Source of the DNA: Mytilus californianus
Lineage: Eukaryota
Assembly (NCBI RefSeq): GCF_021869535.1
Contig: NW_026262582.1
Span: 59,582,001-59,646,000 of the forward strand
DNA length: 64,000 nt
Reading direction: 5' to 3'
The translations under genes and the position numbers were made by a program. This document shows, one piece after another, positions 656 through 64,000 of the stretch (position 1 is its first letter; every line of letters starts with the position of its first letter). A model generated the notes under the pieces. The model made no database searches. It worked only from the letters and a program-made list of their open reading frames with translations, and had not been told where the DNA came from.

Positions 656-913
656 CATGTCAATCTGGACGATATGGTAAACAGTGTAAAATGAAATGCA
701 GTTGTCCGGCTGAATGTACATGTGATCCGGGAACAGGAACATGTAATTGTGGAGGTGATTTGATAAAAGGAGTATGCATAGCTGCCAGTACTATTCAGTT
801 GTGTAACGTAGACAGCACAATGATCATTGACACAACAGCAACTAATGAACAATTCTTAACAAGTTTAAGCGTTGTACATTCTTCTAAGAACGTATTAGAA
901 TTTTCTACAGCAG
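656..913 (+). CDS. Internal exon of an EGF-repeat (MEGF10/CED-1-like) receptor paralogue: EGF-like unit plus S/T-rich stalk
   Basis: TTTCAG|CA acceptor and CAG|GTAGAC donor, phase 1-1, open frame: ACQSGRYGKQCKMKCSCPAECTCDPGTGTCNC...STIQLCNVDSTMIIDTTATNEQFLTSLSVVHSSKNVLEFSTA. Cys spacing is typical of MEGF/SCARF EGF repeats. Confidence 0.8.
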
Positions 914-2112
914 GTAGACTTGTACTACATTTATAGTAAAATGATCGTCATTTTACAGAAACTTGTGTACTCTTATGCCATTCAATTTTGTCATACAGAT
1001 GCGAGTATTCGTTAATTTGCCACAAAAAAAAAAACATTCTGTACTGAAGTGAATTTGATTTGATGAAATAACCGACCAATAATAAAGAGATGTTTTACAA
1101 AATTATTAAATTTCTTAACAGTATACCAAGTTAGATTGATTGATGCTCTATATTTATTTGTTTTCCTTCTTAGCTGAGTTGGGTTAAAACTCTGCTTTGA
1201 TGCAATCTTTCATGCATTTTATGCGATTAAGTGAAAATATAAATTAATATGAAGATCGGGGGGAAAAAGAGAGGTCAGTATAGGACATAGCAATGAACTA
1301 CTATTTGTTGCTTCATCAAAACCAGAACATCCAGATTGTAGTTTAGACATTATTACATATTAAAGTCAACTTCTATTGCAGAATCAAACCAGTCAGCTTC
1401 TAAGCCAGTTATGCTATACAATTTAATAATATTAGGATGCATAGTGTGCATTTGGTTGGTACGGATGATGTCCACAATTAGAACTACTACAAAGAATAGA
1501 ATGAAATGTATTGGCTACATGGATGAATAAAAGAAATAAATATTGAAGGCGGAGATAAAACTTTTAACAAATTAACTGCTTTTGCCTCATTTGTGTTTTA
1601 ATAGCATTACGAAGATACAAAGGGGCAATCACAAATCAAGAACAACAAGCTATATACTTGTAACAGCCAAAATGGTCAAAAAGAAAAGAAAAAAAAAACA
1701 AAAAAAAGCAGTTATAGTTCTACTAGTGACTACATACATTGATACGTATTATCAAGCATCTTTCAACAAAGGACAGATAATAGTTTCTTGTGTAACAGTA
1801 AGATATCACCAACTGTTATAGTTTTAAATAATCTAACTGATTTGACTTTTTGATATCGAGTCACATGTTCAATTGTAATATCAAAGGTACTCAGACAATG
1901 GCAGATGGAAAAGTGATATTGCACAGTTATTTTTATATAAAAAAGAAAAAACATAATTCGCACAAATGATGAAGTGAATTTGTTTTATTTCAGGCATATT
2001 GACATAATATTATAACAATTATAGCCTTCGAATGAGATCGATATGAAGACATATTGACAAAAAGAAGAATATCGACCTTAAACGTCGTCTTCAAGCGATG
2101 TACTTTTTTCAG

Positions 2113-2162
2113 GTCGATATATTCATACACAAGCTGTACTTGTATATTACAAGAATTCATCG
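2113..2162 (+). pseudogene. Possible small exon, frameshifted relative to its duplicate at 63544-63606
   Basis: TACTTTTTTCAG|GT acceptor and ATCG|GTG donor are conserved in both copies. This copy is 50 nt, lacking CCTCGTATCGAAC (13 nt); the duplicate is 63 nt and phase 1-1. Confidence 0.3.
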
Positions 2163-3444
2163 GTGTATGTAAAATATCTTATCTTGAGACATAACTGAAT
2201 TTGAAAATTTTAAATTGGATCGAGGTTATTTCAAGACAAAGGTTGAGCGATACGTTTATTTCTAAAGACATTTTAAAAAAATAAATTATATAACCATCAT
2301 TGAAACCAATAGAAACAGCAACACGAACAACGTAACAACCAGACTTGGGACCAGCACATGTGCTTTTGACATCTTACGCGTTGCAAGCTACGTGAAAAGG
2401 CGATAGAAAGTTCACAACAAACGAGAAGAGGATGACATCGAGGTTACAAAAAGCTGATCATATGGTTTCGTTGTCATCTGTGGCTTCTACAATCACTTGG
2501 ATAAAATTTAAACTTATATATATATATCATAAGCAACCACTCGGTGGCGTGTAGCTACATTCACACGAAAAGTTTAAAATGGGGGAAATTGAATTAGTCA
2601 AATGCGAATAAAGATTGAAAAAAAATAATTCATCCTTTGGTTTTCACTTTAAATATTAATAAAGTATAAATTATTGTATATACCAATCACAGCACATGTT
2701 TTCTACCAGTTGTCATAGTTGAGGATGAATACCAACGTAGAGGAAATTATTTTGCAAACATTTTAAAACGAATATAGATTCAGAATCAAGACGATTTACG
2801 GACAGCAACATAATTTGTAATTCCATTAATCACCAATTACTGCGTATGACTAAAACATGTACAAGACATATTCTGTTTACAAATATGTATTGTGTACCAT
2901 TTGTGTTCACCATTAGATATTTTGCACTTTGACTTTTTCCTCACATTTCGTTTTTTTCATTTAAAATTACATCGGCATTTCCAATAATATAATCACGCTT
3001 TGGATACTGTTCGTTGTGACTTGTAATTGTCTCCGTCAATCCATTACTTAACATGTTTTGGATTGCTACTATTTGCCAGAGACTACAATATAACCAAAGG
3101 AAATCAATAGTTGATTGTCTAGTCAAGATATATCTCTGAGAAGCATACAACTCAATTAGGTAAAAGAAACAAAATAAAAAACAACAACAGACTGGTTATA
3201 AATTGTTGTAAATTAGATTTGAAGTCGATCACACATTGTCACAGGAGAAATTCAAACTGAAAATCTGAAAGTTGGAAAACTTTGTATCACTGAAGTTAAA
3301 TAACTAAGACCAATGCCAGCAAGGTCCCGCGAAAACATATTATGGAAAATACTAGTATGTGTTAATGGAAACAAAAACTACACTGCTACTTACAGGTAAC
3401 AAATATGTTTACTGTATGTACAAGTCAGGTTTTTTTCTCTTTAC

Positions 3445-4392: not shown

Positions 4393-4455
4393 AGGATACG
4401 ATGCATAAATCCAAGACACGCGGTCACTTACCACGTGGAAAGAAACATAAGTAAA
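4393..4455 (+). pseudogene. Remnant of a stalk exon homologous to 16672-16755
   Basis: GGATACGATGCATAAATCCAAGACA vs GGATACCATGTATAAATCCAAGACA (23/25 identical; DTMHKSKT vs DTMYKSKT). Poor acceptor and an in-frame stop soon after. Confidence 0.4.
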
Positions 4456-6899
4456 AACACAACCTTTTTAAACAGACAGAGATTACCAACTGTTCTTCTT
4501 CACTTTGGTATATGTTTGAATTTCCCAATGTTTATGATTTCAGAATCTAAATTGACTATGAGTAATGCCAATGTCTGTCCCATGAAAATGATAAAAGAGT
4601 ATCACCTGATTGGTTGCATTTCTGTTACTTTTGATAGTTCCAGTTATATAATGTAAGATATTCTCCCATGAAAATATGGGCAACCAATACACTAAATTTT
4701 ACAAACAGATGCATAGCTCAAAAAAGAGACAATGTTGAAAAAAAATAATAATCCGAGAATTGTCTATCCGTAATACACATGACCTTAAATACTAAGAACG
4801 TGACGGCAAACACATTAATTCACAGTTTAAGCATTAAACTACTTCCTCAATAAAGGAAATAACAACTGAATTGTTACAACGGCATCTCTGTGTATTAAAG
4901 TCAATTCTATGTGTTCGCTATTACAAGTATCTATATATGTACATATTGTCATTAGAATATGATAAGACCAACAGGAACCTCAGAGATTAGACAAATCAAC
5001 CGTAGGTCAACCTTACCTGATTAATTTATAACCTCAGTCTCTATAACTTTCAGACCATTGGACATCAACACAATCTTAAATGTATGGACTTATTTGTCAT
5101 CTCTTATCTAAACTAATATTCCCTACAAGATACAAACAGACATGTTCAGGGTAAACTATGAATAAATTCATCATAGATTAAACTGTGTACGCCAAACGCG
5201 AGTTTCGTCAATGAAAGACGCATTAGTGACGCTCGAATAAAAAAAAAGCTAAACAGGTCAAACAAAGTACCAATTTGAAGAGCACTGAGAACCCAAAAGC
5301 GATACTTCCTGACAAGGTATCGTCACACAAACATGTGATAATGTTATAATCTCGACCTGTGGAAATATAATAGACACATACTTTAGTTTTCAATTGACTT
5401 CGGATATGAACACTTAAAACTATTTAGTATCGATGCAATTGATATTGGATTTCATATCCTTTTTTATCAAGAAGAATGTAGCAAAGGTTAGATTACAAAT
5501 CTATATTCTAATTGATCCAACTAAAATGTCAATTTATCAATAATGTGAAACATGCACACATTCAAAAACGACCTAATTATTACTGTTAACAATAAAAAAA
5601 AAAAAAAAAAAAAAAAATAACACGCAGCTGAACGTGTCCTTTGCATTTTAAACGTTCTGAAACATTTCCTCATACCTTCATATCATTGTCATAACAAGGA
5701 CCCCGAGTTTTCATTTTGAAAAAAAAAAAACAAAAAAACATTGACCCAAAAGTCTTTTAAAAAAGTTTAAATCTATCGTTAAACATGTAGACACCGCAAC
5801 TTTCTTAAAGACGAACAAGCATATATTCTTTGAACAAAAAAAATTAAAAAATAAAACAGATTAAAAAAAGGAGTGTTGTCATTTTTCTAGACAACAAACC
5901 AATGTTATAATCACTTGATGTATATCTGATTTAGTTGGAATTGGATCATGTGAATACACCAATATAACTTATTTGTAAATAGATTCAGTGTATTCTTCGA
6001 GAAGGGGGCAGGTTTGTGACGTAAACCTACAAACAGTTTCCTAACGAAAGTTTTTAATATAAAAAATAATATATAAAAATATAGCAATACCACAGAAAAA
6101 GTCAACAAATAATGCAAACACTTTGAGATCAGCAATTTTGAATACATAACCAGGATCGGATTATTTGAAATAGATAACTACTGCTGTTTGCACATGTTTT
6201 GAACAAAGACAATTCCGTCAATGTGAAATACAAATTACTCCTATAAGTAATTGAATGACTTCTGTTTCGATATCCAATGACCACTTGTTATTTTCAAAAT
6301 CGTACGATTCTGAAACAAAAAGTTGTTCTTCTTTAACATATAGCAAGTAAGTATATACCAAAAGTCAAAGATAAACATTTCAACAAAACAAAAACCCAAG
6401 ACTAGAAAGAAATTGCAAAACACAACACTGAAAACATAACTCCTACAACAACCGTGGTTGATTCTGGCTTGTATAATGACATGAAAAGGAACTTAGTAAA
6501 AACGTATTTCGGCGCTAGTGTAGGTTTTGCTAAACAGACATAATTTATATTTCATTTTCAAATAAAATCAATTTCGATGTAAGATGTTGTATGATAAATG
6601 CGTTGTTATGGTTTTCTTACTTCTAAATAAGGCATGCCACTTTCTTAAATTTACCACTGGTGGCCAACATACTAGAGAATCAAATCGCATGCAACACTTA
6701 TTTTTTACTTCTCATTGACCATGGTTTAAATCATGTTCCGTTTCAACAAAGATAAAATACTGTAAACGTGATGATACTCAGCAGGGATTATTTTTTGGTT
6801 ATTTCGCAATAACGTAAAATAACTTAAAGTTTCTGTAGCGTGAATAATTTGAAGAAACAAATCAATATTGACACGGAGGGCGTATTATAGTTAAATGCG

Positions 6900-7510
6900 T
6901 CAATTAATAAACCGCCTCAAATTGGTATACGTTAAAAATCTTAATTAACAAACTACTAAGCTACTGACATTATTTAAAACAAAACTTTCAAAACTTGTCC
7001 AATTATAAATTTAGAAATTATAAAGAAACTAAGGTTTCAACTCCCTCAGTTAAAGTTGGCCTTAGCTGGATTAGGTTTTTTTAAGGTCCTTTTCAGTTAT
7101 AGATCTCAACTATCCAGGGGTGACTGAGGAATAGAAATATGGTCGCTATAGGCCTTCTTCCGACCGGCAGTAAAAACCAGGCGTCTGTTTGGCTGTGCGG
7201 GATTTACAAGCACGCAGCCACATCATGTCAGAATGGGAACATTAAATCCAATGTCTCATGTAGAGAGGGTGCCACACTCTCAACACATCAATAACCAATG
7301 TAACAACTCTTTGAATGGTCCGTAGGTGACCTGTTGTAGGACAATATACCCTTATTTTCAAGTGGCAGTGCAAATGTCCAGACCTTCACCCAGGACAGTC
7401 CCCATTATAAGACCTACCAATTGCACACATTCATAGTTATTTTTGTTCTCGTCCTGAACATGCATGCAATATTATGACAAATTGACGTTAAGCAACCAAC
7501 AATCAATCAA
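6900..7510 (+). mobile_element. Composite repeat block including a SINE-like element (core reminiscent of V-SINE); duplicated at 9767-10356
   Basis: Direct alignment with 9767-10356, and a CAAT-repeat 3' end at ~7495-7510. Family assignment is from memory only. Confidence 0.65.
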
Positions 7511-9152
7511 TTAAGGTTCAATTGTGTCGGTTCTTATACATTCTAGGCTTTTAAATATTCGACTTTGAGTGTCCCTGATAAAATTAAATCCAGTAAAGCG
7601 GTATTTATAAAGTGTTGTTTTCATTATTTGTCTATATCACTTAGTCTGAAACTACAAATTTTCATTTAAAAGTATGATGCACATTTTATGCATTCAATAA
7701 GCAAATTCCAGCAGAATTCACCAAAGCATGTGAAGAGGACTTACTATCTGCTTTATTGGTTTGTGGCTCTCTTCATGGTTATGCAAAATATTCTATTTTT
7801 TGTATTTTCCTCATTATTATGTAGAACATATATAATTTCATCGATAATAATAATCACGATATCAACTGCGATGCACCAGATGCAAATTTAGACAATTAAT
7901 GTATCTTCAGTGATCATTAAGACCAAATTATTTAAAGGATATAAATAAAGTATAAACGATGAAGAGCTGAGGAAACCGAAATGGACGTGCTCTATATTCA
8001 ATTGAGAAAATTATCCTCCATTTTCAGACAGAAGGTCATTTACAGGATTAACACTGTATGTATTATAGCAAACGTTAAAGTCGCTGTCCAGGTATGCTAG
8101 GCTAACATATGATCAATTTGATGTTATTTTCTATCTAGTGAAATAAGCAAAATTTATAAATATTTCATCTTTATTACAATTTTGGGAAATTCTGGTCAAT
8201 GTGAACATAAAAAACAATATTTGTTTAGTATGGATAATGATTATGTTTAAATCGTGGAAATCGTCCTAACGTGGCATGTTCAATAAAAGATGTTTGTATT
8301 CTAATGTCCGGATAAAGGCACTCTCTAAATAAAATACATGACGTGTGAACATTAGCATTTTAAATGCATGTATTTTTGAAGTACTACAGAGATTGACTTA
8401 TTCTTTTTATTTTAACAAGACGTGATAGAAAACATTTCGATAAAAGTCCTGTGTCAAACAGACCAGAATAGGTATGCTCAATTTAACATTATACAAGTAC
8501 TTGTAAATTATCATTTATTTACTCTTCTTGCTTCAAACGCTATAAAGAAACAGTATATCAAACAATATAAATGTTAGTATTGGTTACACTTTAAATATTT
8601 ATTAGTTCTTCAATTTGTGCAATCTCAACAAGCTATGTTGAAGTTGAAACACAAAAAATGTTGAATATCGATAGATGAGACGGAGTATGCATGCTTGTTG
8701 CTGTCAATCTTACACGATATTATTATTTTGATATTTTTTTACAGTACGAAAAATAATACAAACGACCACACATTATATGTTTTTCGTATTTTATCTTTTC
8801 TTATTTATGTTTTATGTTTTTTTTTTATATTTATCTGACCCATATTTAACAGGATCACAAGGACTAGTTCAATGATAATCTTAAAATCTGTAAGCTATTA
8901 TTATATTTAAAAGAGAGGCGAAAGATCTAAAAGGGACATTCAAACCCATTAGTCGAAAACAAACTGACCATGCCATGGTAAAAAACGAAAAAACAAAAAA
9001 ACAAAAGACAAACATAGAAAATTTAGTACCACGAACCCAGCCCAAAATCGGAGGTGATTTCAAGTACTAAGGGAGGGTACGGAGAGTATACTGACACCCG
9101 TTTTGTACAAAAAGTCTCATGGAACAGGTCATATTCAAGAAAAAAAAGGACG

Positions 9153-9751
9153 GGATTGTGGTGTCGACTATTGAAACATATCTGTCATCATCTCTGAAAC
9201 ATACATTTCATGACGGTCAGGCAACTCGTGATGCCGTCCGTAAACTTTTCGAAGGGATATTTTTAATTTCAACGCTCGATACCGTGGCTTTAAGGCTTCC
9301 TTGTGAGCAGTATACGTACACATCAATAGGCTTCAGTTTTTGTGAGGTTTTATTGACCTCCCCTTTTTTAATTTTTCTTGGATTTCGGAATTTTGGTTGA
9401 TACGTTTTTTTTTGCACTGGCGCTGTAGAAGAACATATCCATTGTTACCTCAAATCGATTACATTTGCACAGGAACTTTTGTTTGATTTACGTTTTGTTA
9501 AAAAACAGGCTGTTGGTTTTCTTATTGAAATGTTTTACATGTTACCAACTCAGGGTCTTCGATTGCTTTTTCTGTGGTACTAGTTTATGTATAAGAGCAC
9601 CATCAAAACAAATTTTTGTAATCATTTAGCGAAAACACAGACACAAACCTCTGTCAATAGCTCAGACAAATGAAAATGATGGTTTATCTGTGCTTCATTG
9701 TGACATAAGTATGCACCCAGCAAACAACAACGAATGTTTTCTTATATTTTA
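9153..9751 (+). repeat. Block A of a local duplication (contains a degraded Penelope-like 3' fragment); copy at 10362-10951
   Basis: GGATTGTGGTGTCGACTA...CAACAACGAATGTTT aligns colinearly with 10362-10951. Its first part resembles 26130-26280. Confidence 0.85.
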
Positions 9752-9766
9752 TAGTTAAATCTGTAA

Positions 9767-10951
9767 AATTAATAAACCGCGCAAAAACTGTCTGCGTTAA
9801 AACGCTTAATTTACCAACTACTACGCAACTGACATGATTTATAACAAAACTTTCAAAACTTGTCCAATTATGAATTTAGAAATTATAAAGAAACTAAGGT
9901 TTCAACTCCCTCAGGCAAAGTTGACCTTAGATGGATTTGGCATTTTTAAGGTCCTTTGTAGTTATAAATCTCTTCAACTATGCAAGGGTGATTGAGGAAT
10001 AGAAATATGGTCGCTTAGGTCTTCTTCCGACCGGCAGTAACAGTCTTTTAAAAGTGAGGCGTCTGTTTGGCGGTGCGGGATGTAATATCAAGCAGCCACA
10101 ACCGGTGAGAATGGGGACATTGGATCCGATGTCTCGTGTAGAGAAGGTGCCATGCTCTCTGCACATCAAAAACTCTTGTAACAACTCTTTGAGTGCTCCG
10201 TAGGTGACCTGTTGAAGGGCAAATGTCTGCCCCTATCTAATATACCCTCATTTTCAAGTGACAGTCCAAATTTCCAGACCTTCACCCAGGACAGTCCCCA
10301 TTATAAGACCTACCTATTGTACAAATTTATTTTTAATTTGTTCTCGTCCTGAACATGAACTGGAATTGTGGTGTCGACTATTTAAACATATCTGTCATCA
10401 TCTCTGGAACATACATTCCATGACGGTGGAGCAACTCGTGATGCCGTCCGTAAACTTTTCAAAGGGATAATTTCAACGCTCGATACCTTGGTTTTTAAAG
10501 CTTCCTTGTGAGCAGTATACGTACACAACAATAGGCTGTTTTTGTAAGGTTTTATTGACCTCCCCCTTTTTTCATTTTCCTTGGATTTTGGAATTTTGGT
10601 TGATACGTTTGTGCACTGGTGCTGTAGAAGAACATATCCATTGTTATCTCAAATCGATTACATTTGCACACGAACATTTTTTAATTTACGTTTTATTCAT
10701 AAAACAAGCTGTTGGTTTTCTTATTGAAAGGTTTTACATGTTATCAACTCGGGGTCTTCGATTGCTTTTTCTGTGGTACTGGTTTATGTATAAGAGCACC
10801 ATTAAAACAAATAATTTGTAATCATTAAGCGATAACGCAGACACAAACCTCTGTCATTAGCTCAGAAAAATGAGTATGATGCTTTTTCTGTGCTTCATAG
10901 TGACATCAGTATGCACCCAGTAAACAACAACGAATGTTTACGTATATTTTA
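9767..10951 (+). repeat. Second copy of the 6900-9766 segment with ~1.7 kb deleted
   Basis: 9767-10356 matches 6900-7463 and is joined directly to 10362-10951, which matches 9153-9751. Confidence 0.8.
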
Positions 10952-12305: not shown

Positions 12306-12951
12306 TTCTGGTATATAAGATGAGTTTATTTATGTAGCTCCCGTTTTTCCCGTAGCTGAGGAGTAATTCATAATGTTCGGCATACATTTTGTTTTTGTCC
12401 AACTCGATCGTTTCAATTGTATTTGTAATGAATGACAATAATTAAACCAACAATTTAAGTATATTAAGCAGTTTTTTTGTTATGTTTTGTTAAATTGGTT
12501 ACCTTTTCCTCGGTGTTTCACGTTATGATTTGATATTAGTTTGATTTATGTCTTTCTGCTAGAAATTTGTGAACATATTAAAATATAACGCACACGTTAT
12601 ATGTCAGTTTCAATAATTATGTCATTATATTAAATGAAATAATTGTTTGTGTAAATTGATAACCAATCAAACATCGAATACCCAAGAGTATGTATTAAGA
12701 TGGCCTAATTCGTTGTTGTGAATAAACGTCATAATATATTTAAAAAAAACTTCATAGCATTGCGCATAATTTGTTGTTTCACAATGTAGCAGGTCAATTT
12801 GGTGAACATCTCGTTACGAAATGTTTTCACTCTTTTTAACATACATTGATTTGCATATGATAGCATGTTCGGATCTAAATATTAGTGTAATTTGTCCAGC
12901 CATTGTTAATGCCAAAAAGTAGGTACTATAATATTTACATTTCTATTTCAG

Positions 12952-13040
12952 GGTTTATTATACATAAACTATTTAGTTTTTTGCTTCTCCGTGTACTTTA
13001 ACTTAATGTGTACGTACACATCTATGTCCGAAGACGTTGT
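12952..13040 (+). CDS. Receptor paralogue U2, putative signal-peptide exon (GLLYINYLVFCFSVYFNLMCTYTSMSEDV)
   Basis: TTTCTATTTCAG|GGT acceptor, hydrophobic open frame, and a phase-2 donor GT|GTAATG matching the phase-2 start of the next exon. Initiator ATG not located. Confidence 0.4.
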
Positions 13041-13142
13041 GTAATGTGTAACTTTGTTTTTCACAAGTTAATCCGAGAAAATTTGAAATATTAAGGTATT
13101 CGACATTCGTTCTTACTTATTATTATCGTCTTTATATTTCAG

Positions 13143-13213
13143 CAAATCCCAGAAAGTTGACATTCATTTGAACTGTTGCCCCAACTTCTACGTTGAGAAT
13201 AATATTTGCACCC
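13143..13213 (+). CDS. U2 exon: truncated EMI-like C-terminal motif (KSQKVDIHLNCCPNFYVENNICTP)
   Basis: TTTATATTTCAG|C acceptor and C|GTAAGT donor, phase 2-1. CCxxFY...CxP matches the end of the EMI domain in MEGF10/CED-1/Draper-type proteins. Confidence 0.75.
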
Positions 13214-14924
13214 GTAAGTAATGTTTTGACAACAAGATCAGTGTATTGACTTCACTCGATAATCATTATTGTTCCATTTTTGTTAGTATGTCTTTATTGT
13301 CTGTATATTTAAAAGCAGTATTCTTCAGGAATTGAAATAACGGACAAAGAAGATTTAATAGTAAAATAGTTAGTGCATTATCTACGCGAACAATATAATA
13401 TACCATATTCCTTTGTGTCTGAAAAAAATTAAATGTGCAAAGAAAATAAAAGTCCGAAAAAAGGAACAATTATTGGCTCAAACATACATGCATGTTAGCA
13501 TTCCCATATGTCATGTATGTTGCATCGACATAATTTAAATTTAATTTTTTGATTTTCAATTACACCTTTATATATATATATCATGTTTCTTTACAAAACA
13601 CTTTACATTGAACATTTTGAACGAAATAATAATGCTCTGCGCAACAATGCAAGGAGGGCGGTAGTGTTTTTTTTTTTGTTTTGTTTTTTTTTGTTTTTTT
13701 TTTTGTTTAAAGAGCATATAAGCACGAATGGGGAAAAGTGCAATAAAGGGAAACATGAGTAAGCAAAATGTTAGGAATTGAATGCTTAGAGCTTATATTT
13801 AAGCTTAATATTGAATATATTATAAACATTCGAAAGAAAAGAAGGACAAAACACTAATATTGGTATGGTAGTTCATAAATTTCGTCGTGGTAGGCTCGGA
13901 TTATTTTCTGGTGTTCGGTTGGATTGCTGTCTCTTAGACACATTACCCGTGGCCATTCTCTATTATTTTATATTTAAATATGTCAAATGAAGCATCAACA
14001 AGAAGTTCAAACAACTAGACAGTAATTGATCACGCATGTTTTAATTTCAAAAAAATCAAACCGAATTGAATAGAGTGAAATAAACATAGTCAATATTAGG
14101 TCAACGTCAGACCAAATATTATATGTTTGAATGAGGCTCAGAGAGTGGGGAAGGTTGAAGTTTCCTGAGCCCTTCCACAGTTTGTGCCGAATACAAAACG
14201 TTAATGTTTTTTCTGACATTGACGTAATGTTTCTTTTATCTTAAATGGCTACAATTATAGTAACAAAACGTTTTTTTAAACCCCAAACAAGCACCAGCGT
14301 GTTAAGAAATGTGACGTTACATGAAATCGTCACAGTAAGATATATCACCATGTTACTATATGTGGTAAATAAAGACTAAAAATATCCTGGCTACAGTATA
14401 CATTTATATCCAATACAGTCTCGATCAAAACACTGGACGTTTGTTTTGAAAACCGTTGCATTATCACGGATTAGTGATATTTTCTCTAACGCCTTACAAT
14501 AAAAACTAATAGAATCAACGCTTCATCTATGCAATGTGTGAGGTGGTCGCCATTCAATGAAATATGTCTTTGTTGTAATACTTTAAATCTTTAAATTCCT
14601 GGTTTTCAAATTTTTCATGATGAACGTAAATTCAACAGTCCGGTTCGGACATAATACATTGATTAAGTGTTATGTTAATTCGTGTTGTCGTTTATAAATT
14701 ACGAACATTTTATTAACGTAGGACAGACAAAGCTGACCTTTGATTGGTTGAGCTAGTCTATTTCGCTCATGGTTATTTAAACATTGATGAATGAAAATCA
14801 TGAAAATCGATTCATCCTAAATGAATAGTCGAAGTGTTATTTTGAATTTACGTTTGTTTTCTTTGCTTTAAACACATCACTTCTAAGACATGCACTAAGC
14901 GTAACATAACAAATTTATCAAAAT

Positions 14925-15235
14925 AAAGAGATGTTGTGTAATTGCCCATGAGACAACATTCCTCTGGAGACCAAATGACATAGATTAAGAAGTTACCGTA
15001 AGGCCTTCAACATTGATTAAAACCCATGCACATAGTAAGCTGTCAACGGCCCCGAAATGAAAATTGGTAAAACAAATCAACTGAGAAAAAGAGCGGCCTG
15101 ATTTATGTAAACAAAAAAAACGTCAAACAAAAATGATACAAGTAAACAACAACAAATGACAACTACTGAAATGACATGCTCCTGAATTTGGACAGGCACA
15201 TAGAAAATTAAACAATATAAGAAATACGTATCTGA
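14925..15235 (+). mobile_element. Degenerate copy of the AGATGTGGTATGATTGCCAATGAG interspersed repeat
   Basis: Aligns with 18605-18935 and 55905-56200. Confidence 0.75.
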
Positions 15236-15403
15236 AGCAAAATATTTATCATACACATCTATCATCCAATTGGTTTAACGTAAAGACGTTATCAGCATCC
15301 AGAGAAAAACATGAAAACATGTCCTTGTGCAATGCCAACATATAATTTGATATAAAGAGGAGTGATTGCAGTATAATTATACATGCTTTGATTCATGTTA
15401 CAG

Positions 15404-15559
15404 CATGTCCAGCTGGATGGTATGGCAAGAAGTGTAAAGAAAAATGTTTATCGAATTACTACGGTAACCTGTGTAAACAAATGTGTAATTGTTCGTTAAA
15501 CGAGACATGCAATAATGTGTACGGCTGCATATGTAACGACAGCAGTAACTGTTCAGATC
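15404..15559 (+). CDS. U2 EGF-like exon (CPAGWYGKKCKEKCLSNYYGNLCKQMCNCSLNETCNNVYGCICNDSSNCSD)
   Basis: TGTTACAG|CA acceptor and C|GTAAGT donor, phase 1-1, classic MEGF-type EGF cysteine pattern. Confidence 0.85.
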
Positions 15560-16236
15560 GTAAGTACTGATAAATTACTAGTATAAGTTTCTCTAGATCA
15601 AAAAGTTGTCAAATTAGTGTTGGGGGAACGGTGACGGCAAACTCAATTTACATCGTATAGAATGCAACAGATATATGTAGTTCATAATACAAGCTTTAAA
15701 ACTCACCATATTAATTAGTATATAAGAGAAAAAATAATCGGAAAGACAGCAACAATTAGCAAAAACTACAGATAACCCTTTATCAGTTAAAGCCAATAGA
15801 AAAACGTGCTTTGAGGAAGATGGGCTTTTGAAGCGGTGTATGATTTGCACCTACGTGGTAATCAAGTTCTATCTGCATTGGTATCACATGCCTTGTCTCT
15901 AAGGACTTGCAACGAAAAATGAAAATTTTTAACGTATTTCATTGGCATTTCAAACATCTTTGTATTTCTTAAATAAAAAAAAAAACATCATTTACCGTTG
16001 ATATATGACATTTCGGTTAATAGATGGTAATAATTTGTCTTAATGACTTCAAAAATATTTGGTATTTTCAATATTTTGCTTTCATTTGACCATGTAAACG
16101 TTTTTGTATTATTGTATTGTCGAATGCTCAATATTATTTGCACGTTGTCATCTAGACAAAATGCTAGATGTCTTTAAATGTTCAAAATAACAATTTATTT
16201 AGTGTTCCCGTTCAACATACCTTTAATAACATTTAG

Positions 16237-16275
16237 AGCCAACTGGTCTCCGGAAGTTGGGAAGTACAAAAACAG
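16237..16275 (+). CDS. U2 short stalk exon (QPTGLRKLGSTKT)
   Basis: ATTTAG|AG...ACAG|GTACTT, 39 nt, phase 1-1, open. Support is splice logic only. Confidence 0.4.
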
Positions 16276-16671
16276 GTACTTCTGATCTGAGCGACAGGAC
16301 AAATATGCCCTCCTATCTTGATTTCGTATGTTTTTTTTTTCATTATTCAAAAGAAAGTTTTAACAAGGGATCTACAGTAATCTCATGTCCTTAAGCTTTC
16401 ATTTGATACTAACAAATGACCAAGATGATCCAAATGTTTTACTTATTGACAAATTTGCAGCTATACGTAAGAACTATTTTGTTTAATATATGTAATACTT
16501 TCTTGTTCTTTTTTTTCTGACTCTGCCGAATAAGGTGTTCTAAACCTACAAAATGTCCATAAAAAAAATAGCCAATAGTACGGAAAGCAGCGTTATACAC
16601 CAGTCAATCAATCCAGATTTGTGAATAGAACATTAAACCCAAATAACAATCTTTTGTTTTACTCTTATTAG

Positions 16672-16755
16672 GGGATACCATGTATAAATCCAAGACATAT
16701 ATGTTTAATGGTTACAACAATACTTTGCCAACAACAATGAATATATGGACAACAG
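16672..16755 (+). CDS. U2 T-rich stalk exon (GDTMYKSKTYMFNGYNNTLPTTMNIWTT)
   Basis: CTCTTATTAG|GG acceptor and ACAG|GTAATT donor, 84 nt, phase 1-1. Homologues lie at 4393, 46030 and 53813. Confidence 0.6.
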
Positions 16756-17268
16756 GTAATTTTCGGAAACAATATGGTTGTTGTTTAAGTTATATGCTCG
16801 TTGGAGTTTGAAAAATATAGTTGTTACGGAATTATCAAGAGTGTTATTTAATGTTCCACATTGTCTTGCTAGCTTAAAGCAATTTTCATAAAAGTTATAA
16901 ATTATTCAAACAAATTATAGTACTGGAAACTAATACATGAGATGTATTGCTTTTTAATATCGTAGATACTTTTATAAAAATTAACACAATAGAAAATTTT
17001 GTTTTTATACCATTCTTAATACTTATACTGATTAGTCTTTTTTAATGTACTTAACAAAGATCAGATTAAGGATTACTGGCATATACAAGCGTCAGTTACA
17101 ACACCGTAAGTGTTGTTACATAATGATAATTGAGACAAAAAACAACTTACGTTTCATGAATTATTTAAGAAGAAAAAGCAAGTGCGTCAGTTTCTACTTG
17201 TATATGAGCTCGTCCTTGGAGTCACTTTTATTCTTCGATTCATAAAACTAAATGACATATGTTTTCAG

Positions 17269-17600
17269 AAGGATATTCGACATATAGACACATCCATGTT
17301 TATGTGATCAGTGTATCAGCTGCTATGGTGTTGGTTTGCCTAGCAACAGCATTTATAAGAATTATCCGCAGCACACGGAAAGGAAACGGTCTAGATTCTG
17401 AAAATTATAAAAGGAAAAGGAACGGAAGAACGACATATCCAGTAAGTGGCGGTATGAAATTTAGCAGATCACAGTACGCAGTTTCCTCAGGTGCATGTCA
17501 AATGTTCACAGAACGCACACAACATCAGTTTATTGAAGTTAAGGATAAAAAAACACTGGAATCTACAGGTATCCGTGGCCTTTACAATAGAAAACAGTAA
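17269..17600 (+). CDS. U2 terminal exon: transmembrane helix plus cytoplasmic tail
   Basis: GTTTTCAG|AA acceptor (phase 1). EGYSTYRHIHVYVISVSAAMVLVCLATAFIRII is followed by basic RSTRK and ends LYNRKQ*. Clearly paralogous to 46999-47291. Confidence 0.8.
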
Positions 17601-29657: not shown

Positions 29658-29758
29658 AAGAAGATGCGATATTTCAACACATACAGTTCTACACTATCAT
29701 TATAGCTGCTACCTTGTTGCTGGTAGTTGTAGCTGCAGTTTCTGTAAAATCAACTTAA
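29658..29758 (+). CDS. Paralogous TM exon with essentially no cytoplasmic tail (EEDAIFQHIQFYTIIIAATLLLVVVAAVSVKST*)
   Basis: T-tract + CAG|AA acceptor in the same phase as 17269 and 46999. TM is alignable with those exons; stop follows immediately, with repeat-derived sequence downstream. Confidence 0.6.
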
Positions 29759-39148: not shown

Positions 39149-39489
39149 ATAGTTAGTATTGATTCTTGAAGTTCAAGTACAGATTTTGGATTTATAAGGT
39201 CGAATTTATCATGTATGGTTCAACCTTTTTCGTTCTTGGCGTTTGTGCTAATTTGACAATATGGTTTGTGATCTGCATCTTATATATGAAACGACAGCTT
39301 TGTCCAAAAAAGCCAATACAAAGGTGTAAATGGTGTAATCGTCTCCAAAACCAACCAATAAAGCTCCGATCACCTGTAGAAATTCGACAAAACGTCCCAC
39401 GAAAAGTAGCTTCTAATCTGCAACAGCAAGATAACGCAATCGACAAAAACCAATATTGTGAACCATGGGAAGCAACAAGTAGCGTGTGA
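39149..39489 (+). pseudogene. Terminal TM + tail exon of a paralogue (..EFIMYGSTFFVLGVCANLTIWFVICILYMKR...KNQYCEPWEATSSV*), 5' part disrupted
   Basis: Branch-like CACTAAC plus TTTTGTTCAG acceptor is in phase with the 39166-39489 ORF but followed by two in-frame stops (39154, 39160). The C-terminus is nearly identical to that of the 46999 exon. A downstream acceptor could rescue it. Confidence 0.55.
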
Positions 39490-46029: not shown

Positions 46030-46103
46030 AAACATGTCAACACCCGATACATATATGTCGTCAACTGGTGCAGACAATACTACCATGGTTTCAAATACAA
46101 CAG
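46030..46103 (+). CDS. S/T-rich stalk exon (NMSTPDTYMSSTGADNTTMVSNTT); acceptor uncertain (45965, 46028 or 46030)
   Basis: ACAACAG|GTAATC donor in phase 1, as at 16755. ACATATATG and terminal ACAACAG are shared with 16672-16755. Frame is open back to 45965. Confidence 0.5.
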
Positions 46104-46998: not shown

Positions 46999-47291
46999 AA
47001 GGATCACTTCTAGAAATATATGTTTATATGATCAGTGTATCAGCAGCTCTGCTGTTGGTTTTGCTAGCAACAGCTTCTGTAAGTTGTCTACGTAACACAA
47101 GAAAACGATTTGGTCGAGAATCTCAAATGTTTAGCAGAAAAAATAACCGAAAATCGGCTTCTGACAGACCAGTTAGTAACGCTATGGAACTAAAAAGAGT
47201 GTCGTGCATGTCTTCTGCAAGTGCAAGTCGAGATAAAGCATTATACAAAAATCAATATTGTGAACCGTTGGAAGCAACAAGTAGCGTGTGA
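46999..47291 (+). CDS. Terminal TM + tail exon (EGSLLEIYVYMISVSAALLLVLLATASVSCLRNTRKR...LYKNQYCEPLEATSSV*)
   Basis: TTTATATTTTCAG|AA acceptor, phase 1, open frame. TM is homologous to the 17269 exon. Confidence 0.8.
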
Positions 47292-47329
47292 ATTTCAAGA
47301 AATGAAATTGAAGATGACTGATCAGCACT

Positions 47330-47543
47330 ATGAGTAGTAATAGTAGTAGTAGTAGTAGTAGTAGTTGTTGTTGTAGTAGTAGTAATAGTAGTAGTAGTAG
47401 TAGTAGTGGTCGTAGTAATAGTAGTAGAAGTGGTAGTATAAGTAATCATAGTAGAAGTAGTAGAAGTAGTAGTAGTAGTAGTAGTCATAGAAGTAGTAGA
47501 AGTAGTAGTAGTAGTAGAAGTAGTAGTAGTAGTAGGAGTAGTA
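47330..47543 (+). repeat. Imperfect (AGT)n microsatellite just 3' of the stop codon
   Basis: Direct reading. It continues at 48961-49022 after an insertion, and a shorter tract sits at 39738-39766. Confidence 0.95.
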
Positions 47544-53812: not shown

Positions 53813-53896
53813 GTTAACCTTGTCTGAATCCACTACAAGCAAGTCGACTGGTGTAGACATATACTGGGCCGACAACCATGGTTTTAAATACAAAAG
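53813..53896 (+). pseudogene. Frameshifted duplicate of the 46030-46103 stalk exon
   Basis: TTGATTTATTTCATTAG acceptor context and AAATACAAAAG|GTA donor are conserved. LTLSESTTSKSTGVD is followed by ~10 extra nt that shift the frame. Confidence 0.55.
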
Positions 53897-54768
53897 GTAT
53901 TTTCAGAAAAAAAAAATATCGAACTTTTGGGTTTTACATTTGATTGAGTTGAATTATATCGCGTTTAGGGAATCATGATGTATTTAGATTAATACACAAC
54001 AACTTATTGCTAATTTTTAAATTTGTTCACAAGGTTATAATTTAATCAGACATTGTATGTATAAGTCAGATATATCTGAATATATGAGAAGCTTGAATTG
54101 TTGATGTCGTACATGTTAACCATACATGTATGACATCGTTGAAAATAAAATTTCACACGATATACAAATACAACACGATCTTGAAATGTATTAAATTTAT
54201 ATATCACAGTTGATTATCATCGATATTATTTATATTGTTTTTCACCACTTACAACAATATATGCCGATTAATCCATATGTACACATTACTGATTTCCATC
54301 AAAAGTGTGTTCACTGAAACTTCATGAAGCAAGGGGTAACTCGATAAGTGTATCAGTGAAACAAACATTATGATTAAAAAAGCTCAAATGGAAGACACTT
54401 CAGATTTGTGTCTAGCTATATGTACTCGCTGGAAACAAACCAAATAGATCGTTTTATTTATGTGATCAATAAAAACATTGTAAGTTGAGATATAAATGGC
54501 GATGTTTCAAAACACGATATGCTCAGGAAAAAAAAGCAGTTTAATAGTTTCATTAATCATAAATATAATTTTGTTATTTATCTTACATAAAGATAAATTG
54601 CAGTTATTAGAGGAAATATAAGAACAAAAGTACAAGAAAAACATACTTTCCTATATGAAAGAAATGTATCCGTTGTTGTTTTCTATCCGGAACTCGTTTG
54701 ATACACGGGTCAAATTTGATTTGCATTCCTACATAGGTATAGAGTATCACTAACAGCTGATCTGTTCA

Positions 54769-54854
54769 ATGAAAAATACTTATAGGATATTTGTTATAAA
54801 ATTAGGTGTATGCATTTGTCTGCATGGACCCAATGTTTGTCGACGTTATAGGAG
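54769..54854 (+). CDS. First coding exon of paralogue U7: MKNTYRIFVIKLGVCICLHGPNVCRRYR(S)
   Basis: ATG, hydrophobic core, and PNVC motif as at the start of EMI domains (MEGF10 DPNVC). Consensus AG|GTAAGT donor in phase 2 joins in frame to the acceptor at 60644. Confidence 0.65.
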
Positions 54855-55904
54855 GTAAGTAAATTGATATAAATTATATTGTGTATCAACACTGTTCTGT
54901 TTTTGTGTATATAATCGACGCATTTAAGTTCATATCATATTGCAAAAACAGATGTTGTAAGCAGCGTAGTTTACTTTAAATGAAAGAATTATGTATATAT
55001 TAAAAATGACATTATCTGACAAGTCTGAACAATTCATTTTTAAGTCATGTTCAGTTTTCCAGTCAATTTTCAGACCTGTTTACGGTAGTAAAGTAGTAAA
55101 TTCAACATATGTCAGAATATTCGCTTGCAGTCTATTCTGTACTGTCTAGCAGGTATTCAAACAAATCAGTATGATGTTTACCGATAAATAACAACGACCG
55201 ATCTTAATTGACGGCAAGTGAGTTGTCTGGACAGTACTGTATTTATTGAATTGGATTGACAGACTAAGAATGATTTAATCATTTTTGTTCAGTCTTTTTA
55301 GAGCTGTTCAGATCAAAATGACCGTTTCAGATCCCCATTCCTTTACTAGTGGAGTCATGCATGCATGTCTATATTAGCTTTTAAACATGGGATATATTTG
55401 GTCATTAGTTTTCGATGGTGTTTTGTGTACTGTACCATGGTATTGTCAGTTTGTTTTCGACAATTGAGTTTGAATTTCCATTTGGTATATTTCGCCTCTC
55501 ATTTAAATTATTTTTTCCTATACGTCATGTAACTTTTCATTTTTTGGAGAACGAAACAATAGCTTAGGGCAATGTTATTATTTATAATCAGTTATTCTGG
55601 CCTGGTAAAATGCAGTGTTCCAGAACGTAGATTATAGCTTACAACAAAATACTTCCTAAGAATAGATGTAACTTTGTAAATAAATAAAATATCTTGAAAT
55701 GTGTGTTCTCGGTTGAAATTATAAGGACTTAGGATCCCTGTAGAAACCATGTTGAGAGTTACTTTTGAATAATAGAAGATTCACATGAAATTGAAAATGG
55801 AGAGCATATTTTGCCTGTTGCTCATGTACCTATTTTCATACTACAAAACATCGTCTATCCAATTAAAGATAGGTTCAATTGTTCAGAACAAGCCTGTATA
55901 AGTA

Positions 55905-56522
55905 TAAAAATAAGGATATGTGGTATGATTTCAAATGAGACAACTATCCACCAAAGTTCAAATGAAGTGGATGTAAGTAATTATAGGCAACAATACGGCC
56001 TTCAACAATGAGAAAGAACCCATACCGTATGGACGGCTATAAAAGGCCACGACTTACAAAATTTAAATCAATTCAATTGAGAAAACTAACGGCCTTATTT
56101 ATAACAAAAACAATTTACAAAAATCAAATATGACAGACATGAACCAACGACAACCACTGAACTATAGGCTCCTGACTTGGGACAGGCACATAAAGAATGT
56201 TGCGGGGTTAAATATGTTTGTGAGTGCTCAACCCTCCCCTAACCTGGAACAGTAGTGTAACAGTACAACATAAGAACAAACTATAAAAATCAGTTGAAAA
56301 AAGGGTTAACTAATCAGATGGATACAAATAGAAATAAATCTAACAGAAACACAGAGTGGACGTGGACGGGTACTTATACACCCCAAAAACAAAAAGACAC
56401 GAAGTACAGATCTGAGAGTACTTGAAGTTACTGACAGCTAGTTCAAAGCCAATAATGATTAAGGAACAAAAATCATGTATCTAAGACTAAAATATCAATC
56501 AGTACACATCCAATGGATTTAG
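55905..56522 (+). mobile_element. Long copy of the AGATGTGGTATGATT interspersed repeat
   Basis: Aligns with 3445-4018(rc), 18605-18935 and 31020-31200. Confidence 0.85.
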
Positions 56523-60644: not shown

Positions 60645-60736
60645 TTTTGTCGGCTGGTTCTACAACCTACACCCTGAATACCGATGTCATTGCTGCGAAG
60701 GATTTTACCAAGACAAAGGCATGTGCAAGCCTAAAT
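60645..60736 (+). pseudogene. U7 exon 2 (FVGWFYNLHPEYRCHCCEGFYQDKGMCKP)
   Basis: TTTATTCGCAG|T phase-2 acceptor and CCxGFY..CxP motif. The position homologous to the U2 donor reads C|CT; the next GTAAGT (60737) would create TAA on joining to 60942. Confidence 0.7.
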
Positions 60737-60941: not shown

Positions 60942-61103
60942 AATGTCTTGCTGTATTTGTGGACAAGATTGCAGATTATCGTATCTGATAGACTTTATGG
61001 TATCAACTCTCTGAAAAAATTTAGTTGCCGGAAAATTGGAGTGTGCCATAAAATTTCGGGATGTATTTGCAAAGACGGATTAACGGACCAAAGTGCAATC
61101 AAT
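60942..61103 (+). pseudogene. U7 decayed EGF-repeat exon
   Basis: TACTTTAG|AA TGT start. Pieces CLA / CGQDCRLS / DRLYGINSLKKFSCRKIGVCHKISGCICKDGLT / PKCNQ lie in different frames (at least 3 frameshifts), with apparent Cys losses. Confidence 0.75.
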
Positions 61104-62128
61104 GTTAGATTAAAAAGTTTGCCTTTTCAGTAATCCAGACAATAGCAAAAAACAAAACCATCATGCACAATTGATTGCAAATAGATTTTCTCTGTAGGGA
61201 TAACTATATGTAAGAATGTTAAATTAGTAAAAATGTCAATGCTTAAAAAAGTGACAGTCACAATAACATAACAGCATGTAAATGATGTATGTAAACGTAC
61301 GTTGTAATGTTAAATGTGGGTGGACTTCTTTTAAACAGCCTTTCTATATTGTGTGTGTTAATGAACGCATGTAGGTTCATTTTATTCAAATATATGTCGT
61401 GGAACGTTCGCTATGCTTTTCAACCGATAATTTGATAACAACATATATGTTCAAAGAAAACGAAAAATATATAGTCTTACTTAAGATTGATAAAAATTGA
61501 AAACAACACGTTTAATAATTTCATGCGTCCGAAGCGCTTTTCTTGATTTACCTTCATCAGGAACGCTCAAAGCCAAACATTTGAAATCCGAGTGATGTAT
61601 AAGTACCGAAACAGTTGAAGAGCTATATGACAAAAATACCTAAAACAAATAGCCTAATTCATCCGAGATCAACTTTGCCTGAGGGAGTTGAAACCTTAGT
61701 TTCTTTATAAAATTTCTGAGATGATTATCACACGAGGATTTCCAATTGCCTATATGACCGAGAACCTTAGATCATGAAATCATAACCGCAGGGGTGCTAC
61801 CAATCTAGATGTTGTATTATAAACATATTGATGATGAACATGCGTATTTGGAATTCATGAAGCATATTGTCTCATATCTAGCATTACTATGATATTTGTT
61901 TTGCATATGTGTAACAAGCGGAAGAAATCTAGCCATAAATTCACATCCAGAATGATAACATATATTAAGGGCCTCTCGTGCAACTACCCTGTTACAGCGC
62001 TTCTCGCGCAAGTTACTTCAGTTATTTCCGGTGTCGTATGTTTACAAATAATATCTGACACTCAAAGACCTGACAGAGGGTGATCGATTCATTAAATTTA
62101 AACTGTGCTATTTGAACAGTCACATTGC

Positions 62129-62246
62129 ATTGATCGTATATTCATATGTGGTATACAGTTATTGACCGTATATTCATATGTGGTATACAGTTATTGACCG
62201 TATATTCATATGTGGTATACAGTTATTGACCGTATATTCATATGTG
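62129..62246. repeat. 32-bp minisatellite, ~3.7 copies
   Basis: Unit starts at 62129, 62161, 62193 and 62225; same unit as at 1-62. Confidence 0.95.
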
Positions 62247-64000
62247 AAATATAATCACTATATACACTGACCGTATATCGCCTTTTTTATGACGTTGGCA
62301 ATGCGTGTGCAATACAGAATACAGGTTCGCGAAGTTTTTACGTTGTCCGCTTCAAATTTACAAATGATGGTTTTACCCTAAATATTTTTTTGGAACAAAT
62401 ATAAGTGTTGCAGTATATAAAAAAAAAAACATACATTGTCTCGAAATATAAATCTTATTTGTAGTCGGCCTTAAAAAGATTAGTGCATTTCATTTGCCTC
62501 ATATAAAAGCAATGTGTAGGAAGTATGTGGTGAAAAGATTAATACATATACTTTTCAATAACGGTCCTATGTTTGTAGTTGTTCTAAATGTGGACATCAA
62601 CCGTACCAACCAAATGCACACTATGCATCCTAATATTATTAGATTGTACAGCATAACTGGCTGAGAAGCTGACTGTTTTGATTCTACAAAAGAAGCTAAC
62701 TGTTATATGTAATTAGCTCTAAACTACAATCTTGATTCGATTTCGAGACAATGTATGTTTTTTTATATACTGCAACACTTATATTTGTTCCAAAAAAATA
62801 TTTAGGGTGGTACGGTTGATGTCCACATTTAGAACAACTACAAACATAAAATGGAATGTATTGGCAACATGGATGAATAAAAGAAATAAATATTGAAGGC
62901 GCGGAGATAAAACTTTTAACAAATTAACTGCTTTTGCCTTATATGTGTTTGTAATAAGATTTAGAAGATACAAAGGGGCAATCACAAATCAAAAACAACA
63001 GGCTATATATATACTTGTAACAGCCAAAATGGTCAAAAAAGAAAAAGAAAAAAAAAAACCAACAGAAATAGATCACATCACATTAACCTAAAGTTTAAGC
63101 AACACAACCTACAGCAAATTCGGAGTGAATTAAGGTACTTCCTCAGAGTCAGCAGTTATTGTTCTACTAGTGACTAAATACATTGATAAGTATTATCAAA
63201 CATCTTGCAATAAAAGACAGATAACAGTGTCTTGAATAACAGTAAGATATCAACAACTATTATTATACTTTTAAATAATCTAACTGATTTGAGTCACATG
63301 TTCAATTGTAATATCAAAGGTAGACAGACAATGGCAGATGGAAAAGTGATATTACACAGTTATTTTTATTTAAAAAAAAAGACATAATTCGCACAACATA
63401 TGAAGTGAATTTGTTTTATTTCAGGCATATTGACAATAATAATATAACAATTATAGCCTTCGAATGATATCGATATGAAGATATATTGACAAAAAAAGTA
63501 TATCGACCTTAGACGTCGTCTGCAGTCGATGTACTTTTTTCAGGTCGATATATCCTCGTATCGAACTCATACACAAGCTATACTTGTATATTACAAGAAT
63601 TTATCGGTGAATGTAAAATATCTTACCCTGAGACTTAACTGAATTTGAAAATTTGAAATTGGATCGAGGTTTTTTCAAGACAAAGGTTTTTCGATATGTT
63701 TATTTCTAAAGACATTTTAAAAAAATAAATGATATAATCATCATTGAAACCAATAGGAACAGCAACACAAACTACGTAACCACCAGACAAGGGGCCAGCA
63801 CATGTGCTTTTCACATCTTACGCGTTGCAAGCTAAGTGAAAAGGCGATAGAAAGGTAACAACAAACGAGAAGAGGATTGCATCGAGGTTACAAAAAGCTG
63901 ATCATATCGTTTCGTTATCATCTGTGACAAATACAATCTCTTGGATAGAATTTAAACTTAAAAATATATATCATAAGCAGCCACTCGATGGCGTGTCACT
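62185..64000 (+). repeat. Diverged duplicate of window positions 1-2555, with an internal complex rearrangement
   Basis: Colinear with 1-405 (to ~62567) and with ~1455-2555 (from ~62808). The 406-1330 equivalent, including exon 656-913, is missing. Confidence 0.95.
63544..63606 (+). other. Possible 63-nt phase 1-1 exon (GRYILVSNSYTSYTCILQEFI)
   Basis: TACTTTTTTCAG|GT acceptor and ATCG|GTGAAT donor, open frame. Supported only by splice logic. Confidence 0.3.

What the first reader, a model, noticed from the sequence alone, without database searches (positions are those of the whole stretch)
656..63606. Tandem birth-and-death cluster of miniature EMI/EGF type-I receptors
Seen: repeated + strand modules with identical exon phases. 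These are a signal/PNVC exon (54769), CC..FY..CxP exons (13143, 60645), EGF exons (656, 15404, 60942), stalk exons (4393, 16672, 46030, 53813) and TM exons (17269, 29658, 39149, 46999). Established: this motif order is that of MEGF10/CED-1/Draper/SCARF engulfment and scavenger receptors, which normally have many EGF repeats and a full EMI domain. Inference: a lineage-specific expansion of very short (1-3 EGF unit) versions that diverge fast in ectodomain and tail, as expected of innate-immune or recognition receptors. This is the best candidate for an undescribed system here.
Basis: partly seen in the sequence, partly recalled or inferred. Interest (0 to 1): 0.72.

Follow-up and report, generated by a model that had tools for sequence, protein, structure and literature searches.

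The report
Mussel mini SCARF/MEGF-like receptor cluster
The window is one repeat unit of a mussel gene cluster for very small EGF-type surface proteins related to scavenger and engulfment receptors; only one gene in it is intact, the rest are decayed copies, and the family is already in the databases but unstudied.

Summary
The exon-like modules exist, all on the + strand, and are far beyond chance. The window is one unit of a cluster of at least 250 kb on a mussel chromosome.

Only one gene in the window is intact: 12821-17600, five exons, 246 codons. It encodes a signal peptide, a 4-cysteine cap, one Tie/SCARF-type EGF exon, a stalk, a membrane segment and a short basic tail. Two intact paralogues lie outside the window, with the same phases.

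The other listed exons are pseudogene pieces or orphan 3' modules:
- 60942 has two frameshifts.
- 53813 opens with a stop.
- 46030 is out of phase.
- The acceptor at 39149 runs into stops.

A full EMI domain and the NPxY/YxxL tail motifs of MEGF10/Draper/CED-1 are absent. The tails end in -SSV or -IEV.

Automatic gene models of relatives exist in Mytilus coruscus ("MEGF10_11") and M. edulis, and large draper/MEGF10-like expansions are reported in oysters. This is a reduced variant of a known bivalve expansion.

No RNA evidence could be obtained. The scan has noted other EGF-stalk receptors in this genome, but not this cluster.

The parts
12821..12918 (+).
   Evidence: It is conserved about 225 nt upstream of every CC1 exon, including the divergent U1/U2 copies and M. 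coruscus. Ungapped identity to U2 is 0.57, against shifted controls with mean 0.29 and maximum 0.43.
13143..13213 (+). Gene B exon 2: the CC-x-x-F-Y...C cap exon, phase 2->1.
   Evidence: AG acceptor and GTAAGT donor. Paralogues.
15404..15559 (+). Gene B exon 3: EGF exon of 51 whole codons with 10 Cys, phase 1->1.
   Evidence: phmmer against the PDB: Tie2 EGF3 E=1.2e-7, SCARF1 0.025. This exon and the 5' part of the TM exon are the only colinear blastn matches between B and U2. The M. coruscus model P0001 uses the same splice sites.
16672..16755 (+). Gene B exon 4: 28-residue stalk with an N-N-T sequon, phase 1->1.
17269..17600 (+). Gene B exon 5: TM segment and basic tail. The conserved ...QHQFIEV end is followed here by AAG instead of a stop, which adds 19 residues. 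AATAAA lies at 17682.
   Evidence: The genome holds 8 paralogous TM/tail exons, all on C2 at 59.567-59.770 Mb.
656..787 (+). EGFa exon, open, belonging to type-2 pseudogene A. Its upstream exons lie outside the window and carry a stop and two frameshifts.
   Evidence: SCARF1 E=0.0016. Upstream lesions.
4393..4454 (+). Stalk remnant of pseudogene A. It is homologous to the start of the gene B stalk, stops after 19 codons, and has no TM exon downstream.
29658..29758 (+). Orphan TM exon (TM4) with a 3-residue tail and no 5' exons of its own.
   Evidence: The paralogue at window-relative 130538 is no better conserved than its flanks (92% over 4 kb).
39163..39489 (+). Orphan TM and tail open frame (TM3) ending in ...ATSSV.
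   Evidence: The paralogue at 137817 has a stop and a frameshift.
46030..46103 (+). Stalk exon of the orphan 3' module E. It is out of phase with the family because of an acceptor change and a 1-nt deletion.
46999..47291 (+). TM and tail exon of module E, open, ending in ...ATSSV. The DNA is 91% identical to the exon and intron of the intact paralogue G3.
53813..53896 (+). Decayed stalk pseudo-exon: TAA as the first phase-1 codon, plus an internal frameshift against its paralogues.
54769..54854 (+). First exon of type-2 pseudogene F: signal-like stretch and G-P-N-V-C, donor GTAAGT, phase 2.
   Evidence: Only 3 copies exist in the 256 kb examined; one of them is frameshifted.
60645..60736 (+). 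CC2 cap exon of pseudogene F, open here. The genome's two other copies carry stops.
60942..61080 (+). Degenerate EGF pseudo-exon of F: two 1-nt deletions and two Cys lost. The copy upstream of the window has the same lesions.
62185..63996 (.). Paralogous copy (88-89% identity) of window 1-2552 that lacks the segment holding the EGFa exon.

Best explanation
The window covers about one unit of a lineage-specific, same-strand tandem cluster of at least 250 kb on a chromosome-scale contig of a Mytilus-type mussel. The cluster holds very small type I membrane protein genes whose ectodomain is a cut-down SCARF/MEGF10/PEAR1-type module.

The one intact gene in the window (12821-17600, 5 exons, 246 codons) encodes a signal peptide, a cap of about 40 residues with 4 cysteines (x-N-V/I-C ... 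C-C-x-x-F-Y ... C), one EGF exon with 10 cysteines (about 1.5-2 Tie/SCARF-type EGF units, several N-glycosylation sequons), a 28-residue stalk, one membrane helix and a basic tail of 70-90 residues.

Shown: exon structure, phases, open frames, paralogy, EGF type, and decay of the other copies.

Inferred: the protein sits at the cell surface as a small glycosylated recognition or adhesion receptor or co-receptor. It would signal not through the NPxY/YxxL route of Draper/CED-1/MEGF10 but through its conserved C-terminal -SSV or -IEV end, which looks like a PDZ-binding motif.

The cluster grows by segmental and tandem duplication, exchanges 3' parts by recombination, and loses copies quickly. In the window there is one live gene beside remains of at least four dead or orphaned ones.
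For: - Gene B has AG/GT at every junction, and its only stop is the terminal one.
- The same 5-exon, same-phase open frame is intact in paralogues G3 (232 aa) and U2 (238 aa).
- Between B and U2 only the EGF exon and the 5' part of the TM exon give colinear blastn matches; the introns are unalignable.
- The EGF exon shows long-term constraint with its main cysteines kept (B vs U2: pN 0.19 against pS 0.66).
- Gene models from M. coruscus and M. edulis use the same EGF/stalk/TM junctions.
- The EGF exons match Tie2 and SCARF1. The nearest Atlas clusters are mollusc MEGF10, draper, PEAR1 and SREC (a lead only).
- The 8 TM/tail paralogues all lie within 200 kb of C2. Exon order repeats three times in 256 kb.
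- Lesions in the other copies.
- Tails lack NPxY/YxxL and end in -SSV or -IEV across divergent copies.
Against:
- The public gene models omit exons 1 and 2 and start in read-through upstream of the EGF exon.
- Constraint is weak overall: dN/dS is 0.83 against M. coruscus, and the tail exon shows 17 non-synonymous against 2 synonymous changes.
- In this genome gene B has lost the conserved stop after ...IEV, so it may itself be starting to decay.
- Pfam finds no domain above threshold on the exons or on P0001/P0002.
- The PDZ-ligand reading rests on motif rules known from the literature, not on a test.
Confidence: 0.68

Rival explanations
1. Everything in the window, gene B included, is an unexpressed relic. 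The cluster would be a graveyard of decaying duplicates whose open frames persist only because the copies are young.
For: - Searches found no transcript-derived protein.
- dN/dS is near 1 against M. coruscus, and exons are only slightly better conserved than introns (91-96% against 82-90%).
- The conserved stop codon is lost in B.
- Most neighbouring modules are clearly dead.
Against: - Three paralogues keep the full 5-exon frame and all splice signals, although the B and U2 introns are no longer alignable.
- The cysteine framework is conserved.
- dN/dS is 0.5 at long range, and 0.37 for the TM2-type tail.
Confidence: 0.17
2. The orphan TM/tail modules downstream of gene B (29658, 39163, 46030+46999) are alternative 3' cassettes of one transcription unit. 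One ectodomain would then be joined to different anchors and tails.
For: - They are on the same strand and downstream of the only intact 5' module.
- The order [5' module, TM4, TM3, stalk2+TM2] recurs in the third unit.
- 29658 and 46999 accept phase 1, as the EGF and stalk donors require.
Against: - 39163 has no in-phase acceptor, and 46030 is out of phase.
- The paralogue of TM3 is broken.
- The modules are no better conserved than their flanks (92% over 4 kb).
- Exon 5 of gene B has its own stop and AATAAA.
- The repeated order follows from segmental duplication alone.
Confidence: 0.08
3. The modules are exons of one long conventional MEGF10-type gene, or an assembly artefact.
For: - All modules are on one strand.
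- Just outside the window, three 4,076-bp units are 99.97-100% identical, which could be an assembly expansion.
Against: - Each type-1 unit has its own ATG exon, and its last exon ends in a stop.
- A cap exon needs phase 2, while EGF and stalk exons leave in phase 1, so the units cannot be chained in frame.
- Copies differ by 10-30% and by rearrangements, far beyond haplotype differences.
- M. coruscus has a colinear locus.
Confidence: 0.04

Closest known systems
SCARF1/SCARF2 (scavenger receptor class F, SREC)
   Same: Type I layout. The EGF units carry the C-x-x-G-x-[YFW]-G-x-x-C signature, and the EGFa exon matches solved human SCARF1 repeats (E=0.0016). From my memory only, SCARF1 also starts with a short x-V-C ... 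C-C-x-G-W ... C cap rather than a full EMI. That is a lead, not a test.
   Different: One EGF exon instead of many repeats. The tail is 70-90 residues instead of several hundred. The cap exons gave no PDB match.
MEGF10/MEGF11/PEAR1, Draper, CED-1 engulfment receptors
   Same: The order is cap with a C-C-x-G/N-F-Y motif, then EGF units of the PEAR1L/laminin kind, then one TM. The nearest named Atlas clusters are these families. The UniProt name of the M. coruscus relatives is MEGF10_11.
   Different: There is no full EMI domain and only 1.5-2 EGF units instead of 15-17. The tail has no NPxY or YxxL. The whole protein is 232-246 aa.
Bivalve draper-like / MEGF10-like gene expansions (annotation level)
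   Same: Many lineage-specific copies exist. In the eastern oyster, dozens of draper-like and MEGF transcripts are reported in haemocytes (PMC13070813), and a multi-member MEGF10 family is differentially expressed (PMC9892467). This genome has further clusters with a cap exon plus 3-4 EGF exons on C154.
   Different: The C2 cluster is the most reduced form seen here, with a single EGF exon. It has its own TM/tail exon family, found only within 200 kb.
Tie1/Tie2 EGF repeats
   Same: This is the best solved-structure match of the EGF exon (E=1.2e-7).
   Different: Tie receptors also have Ig and FN3 domains and a kinase. None of these is present here.

Membership tests
MEGF10/Draper/CED-1/PEAR1 | N-terminal EMI domain (Pfam PF07546, about 70-75 residues, 6-7 Cys) | tested here: not met
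Pfam gave no EMI hit at E<=10 on the signal exon, CC1 or CC2. From x-N-V-C to the last cap cysteine there are only about 40 residues and 4 Cys.
MEGF10/Draper/CED-1/PEAR1 | Long array of EGF repeats (more than 10) | tested here: not met
   The intact genes have one EGF exon of 51-55 codons.
MEGF10/Draper/CED-1/PEAR1 | Cytoplasmic NPxY and YxxL/I signalling motifs | tested here: not met
   A pattern scan of eight tails found none in the cytoplasmic part.
SCARF/MEGF/Tie-type EGF superfamily | EGF unit with the C-x-x-G-x-[YFW]-G-x-x-C...C-x-C signature, recognisable by sequence | tested here: met
   phmmer against the PDB: Tie2 1.2e-7, SCARF1 0.025 and 0.0016. Pfam stays below threshold, with EGF_2 at E=0.0078.
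SCARF (SR-F) | Long Ser/Pro-rich cytoplasmic domain and multiple EGF repeats | tested here: not met
   The tails are 70-90 residues and basic, and there is one EGF exon.
Type I single-pass membrane protein | N-terminal signal peptide, one TM helix followed by basic residues | tested here: inconclusive
   Exon 1 begins with ATG followed by a hydrophobic stretch, and exon 5 has a hydrophobic stretch of about 20 residues followed by an Arg/Lys-rich run. No dedicated predictor was available.
Expressed gene | Spliced transcripts across the predicted junctions | not testable with these tools

The most novel reading that the evidence does not exclude
The cluster could be a combinatorial system. A minimal SCARF-like ectodomain module would be joined, by alternative splicing or by frequent recombination between paralogues, to interchangeable stalk/TM/tail cassettes. 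These carry one of two conserved C-terminal ends (-SSV or -IEV), so one recognition head could be wired to different scaffolds.
Probability: 0.1. Interest if true: 0.6.

Novelty: new variant of a known kind. Interest (0 to 1): 0.3.

Why it matters
Bivalves have no adaptive immunity and carry very large, poorly described expansions of draper/MEGF10/SCARF-like genes. This cluster shows how far such a receptor can be cut down: one EGF exon, a 4-cysteine cap and a short tail with a PDZ-type end, with the same five-exon frame kept intact in three paralogues. It also shows how quickly copies are made, recombined and lost.

It gives a corrected gene model that public annotations miss, and a small, tractable protein for ligand-binding and localisation tests. 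It does not reveal a new kind of system.

Tried and rejected
- Pfam on single exons and on the M. coruscus proteins gave nothing above threshold.
- PDB searches with the cap exons (CC2, and U2 exons 1 and 2) gave only chance hits.
- Frames were checked exon by exon only.
- I looked for a first exon for module E (39600-46030) and found none that is convincing.
- A weak exon-1-like hit at 28228 lacks an ATG and was rejected.
- I considered that the signal exon at 54769 derives from a TM exon at the colinear position. There is only a weak 55-nt local alignment, so this is not supported.
- Word-based protein searches found only 5 relatives.
- ORFs of 90 aa or more elsewhere in the window have no Pfam family.
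- Paper searches found no description of this sub-family.
Full report
**Setting.** The window is G000:C2:59582001-59646000 of a 1.65-Gb mussel genome in 175 contigs. It has 31% G+C and no N. The nearest database proteins come from Mytilus coruscus and M. edulis.

**Observation.**
- Motif scans find the G-P-N-V-C, C-C-x-x-F-Y, C-x-x-G-x-Y-G-x-x-C and N-Q-Y-C-E-P motifs only on the + strand.
- tblastn with the exon peptides on 256 kb (window plus flanks) gives dozens of hits at E of 1e-10 to 1e-70. All hits at E<0.05 are on the + strand.
- The EGF exons are real EGF units of the Tie/SCARF/MEGF kind. 15406-15558 matches Tie2 EGF3 at E=1.2e-7 and SCARF1 at 0.025. 658-786 matches SCARF1 repeats at E=0.0016.
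- Pfam stays below threshold on single exons, with EGF_2 at E=0.0078.

Four details fail:
- 39149 leads to stops in all frames.
- 46030 and 53813 are not in phase 1.
- 60942 has two 1-nt deletions and two lost cysteines.
- 4393 stops after 19 codons.

**The intact gene.** I aligned the 510 nt around every CC1 exon. This showed a conserved ATG exon about 225 nt upstream in all copies, including the old paralogues U1/U2 and M. coruscus. Gene B is therefore 12821-12918 / 13143-13213 / 15404-15559 / 16672-16755 / 17269-17600.
- It is 741 nt long, giving 246 codons plus a stop.
- Every junction has AG/GT, and the phases are 0-2, 2-1, 1-1, 1-1 and 1-stop.
- The same structure is intact in G3 (232 aa) and U2 (238 aa) outside the window.
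- Between B and U2, only the EGF exon and the 5' part of the TM exon align colinearly by blastn. Exon 1 has 0.57 ungapped identity, against a maximum of 0.43 in 830 shifted controls.
- M. coruscus protein P0001 (CAC5394718.1, UniProt name MEGF10_11, 179 aa) uses the same EGF/stalk/TM junctions but lacks exons 1-2. The M. edulis model P0005 lacks them too.

**Selection.** dN/dS is 0.83 (B vs M. coruscus), 0.73 (B vs G3) and 0.55 (B vs U2). The EGF exon is the most constrained and the TM1 tail the least. In this genome the stop after the conserved ...QHQFIEV end is lost, which adds 19 residues.

**The rest of the window.** The cluster has a higher-order unit repeated three times. Its order is stalk3, signal, CC2, degenerate EGF, EGFa, stalk0 | exon 1, CC1, EGFb, stalk1, TM1 | TM4 | TM3 | stalk2, TM2.
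- All three type-2 copies are disabled by stops in CC2, shared frameshifts in the EGF exon, a deleted or truncated EGFa exon, or a lost acceptor.
- So 656 and 4393 belong to pseudogene A, and 54769, 60645 and 60942 belong to pseudogene F.
- 29658, 39163 and 46030+46999 are 3' modules without a 5' part.

The window therefore holds one live gene and the remains of at least four others. This fits birth and death.

**Family size.**
- The TM/tail exon type has 8 genomic hits, all within 200 kb of C2.
- The EGFb type has 45 hits. These include C2 59.55-59.89 Mb and large same-strand clusters on C154 and C99.
- The C154 genes carry a cap exon plus 3-4 EGF exons in about 4 kb.
- CC2 has only 3 copies.

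**Comparison with known families.**
- The full EMI domain, the long EGF array and the NPxY/YxxL motifs of MEGF10/Draper/CED-1 are absent.
- The tails end in -SSV or -IEV across divergent copies. From established PDZ-ligand rules I read these as PDZ-binding ends; this is inference.
- The Atlas look-up puts the M. coruscus relative nearest a 293-aa mollusc 'MEGF10' cluster, then draper, PEAR1 and SREC. The score is 0.89, so this is a lead only.
- Oyster papers report dozens of draper-like and MEGF transcripts in haemocytes and a multi-member MEGF10 family (PMC13070813, PMC9892467).
- I found no paper on this reduced sub-family.

**Limits.** Expression, the 5' end and any alternative use of the orphan cassettes stay open.

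**Verdict.** This is a real, reduced variant of a known bivalve receptor expansion. The gene model is corrected, the novelty is modest, and the function is inferred only.

Noticed in passing
window-relative 74941-86235 (L015-L016, outside the window): Three tandem 4,076-bp units are 99.97-100% identical. Each holds exon 1, CC1 and EGFb of the paralogue G, and the first unit lacks the ATG. This is either a very recent triplication or an assembly expansion.
   Followed up: partly
window 47232-47288 vs window-relative 149127-149165; also 17500-17540: Two alternative tail ends (...NQYCEPxEATSSV and ...RTQHQxIEV) are swapped among otherwise close paralogues. They also differ between this genome's U2 and its M. 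coruscus relative P0002.
   Followed up: partly
window 62185-63057 vs 1-1698: The second copy lacks segment 403-1328, which holds the EGFa exon. In its place is an inverted piece (1329-1493 matches 62736-62572). This agrees with the separate note on a complex deletion junction.
   Followed up: partly
window 46198-47400 vs window-relative 87567-88745: The two are 91% identical from inside the stalk-TM intron through the TM exon, although the stalk exons are of different types. This suggests a recombination or gene-conversion breakpoint near 46198.
   Followed up: no
window 47333-47544: An (AGT)n microsatellite of about 70 copies starts about 40 nt after the TM2 stop. Runs of Ile and Val codons at 39668-39890 suggest a similar array after the TM3 stop.
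   Followed up: no
window 54760-54812 vs 46989-47041: The type-2 signal exon sits where a TM exon would be expected after the stalk3 remnant. It shows a weak 55-nt similarity to the start of the TM2 exon. The signal exon may have been recruited from a TM exon, but the match is not significant.
   Followed up: partly
window 6885-7462, 9128-10951, 25030-25289, 31005-31212, 55894-56513: Several interspersed repeat families are shared among introns and spacers of the cluster, on both strands. None has a Pfam-recognisable ORF.
   Followed up: no
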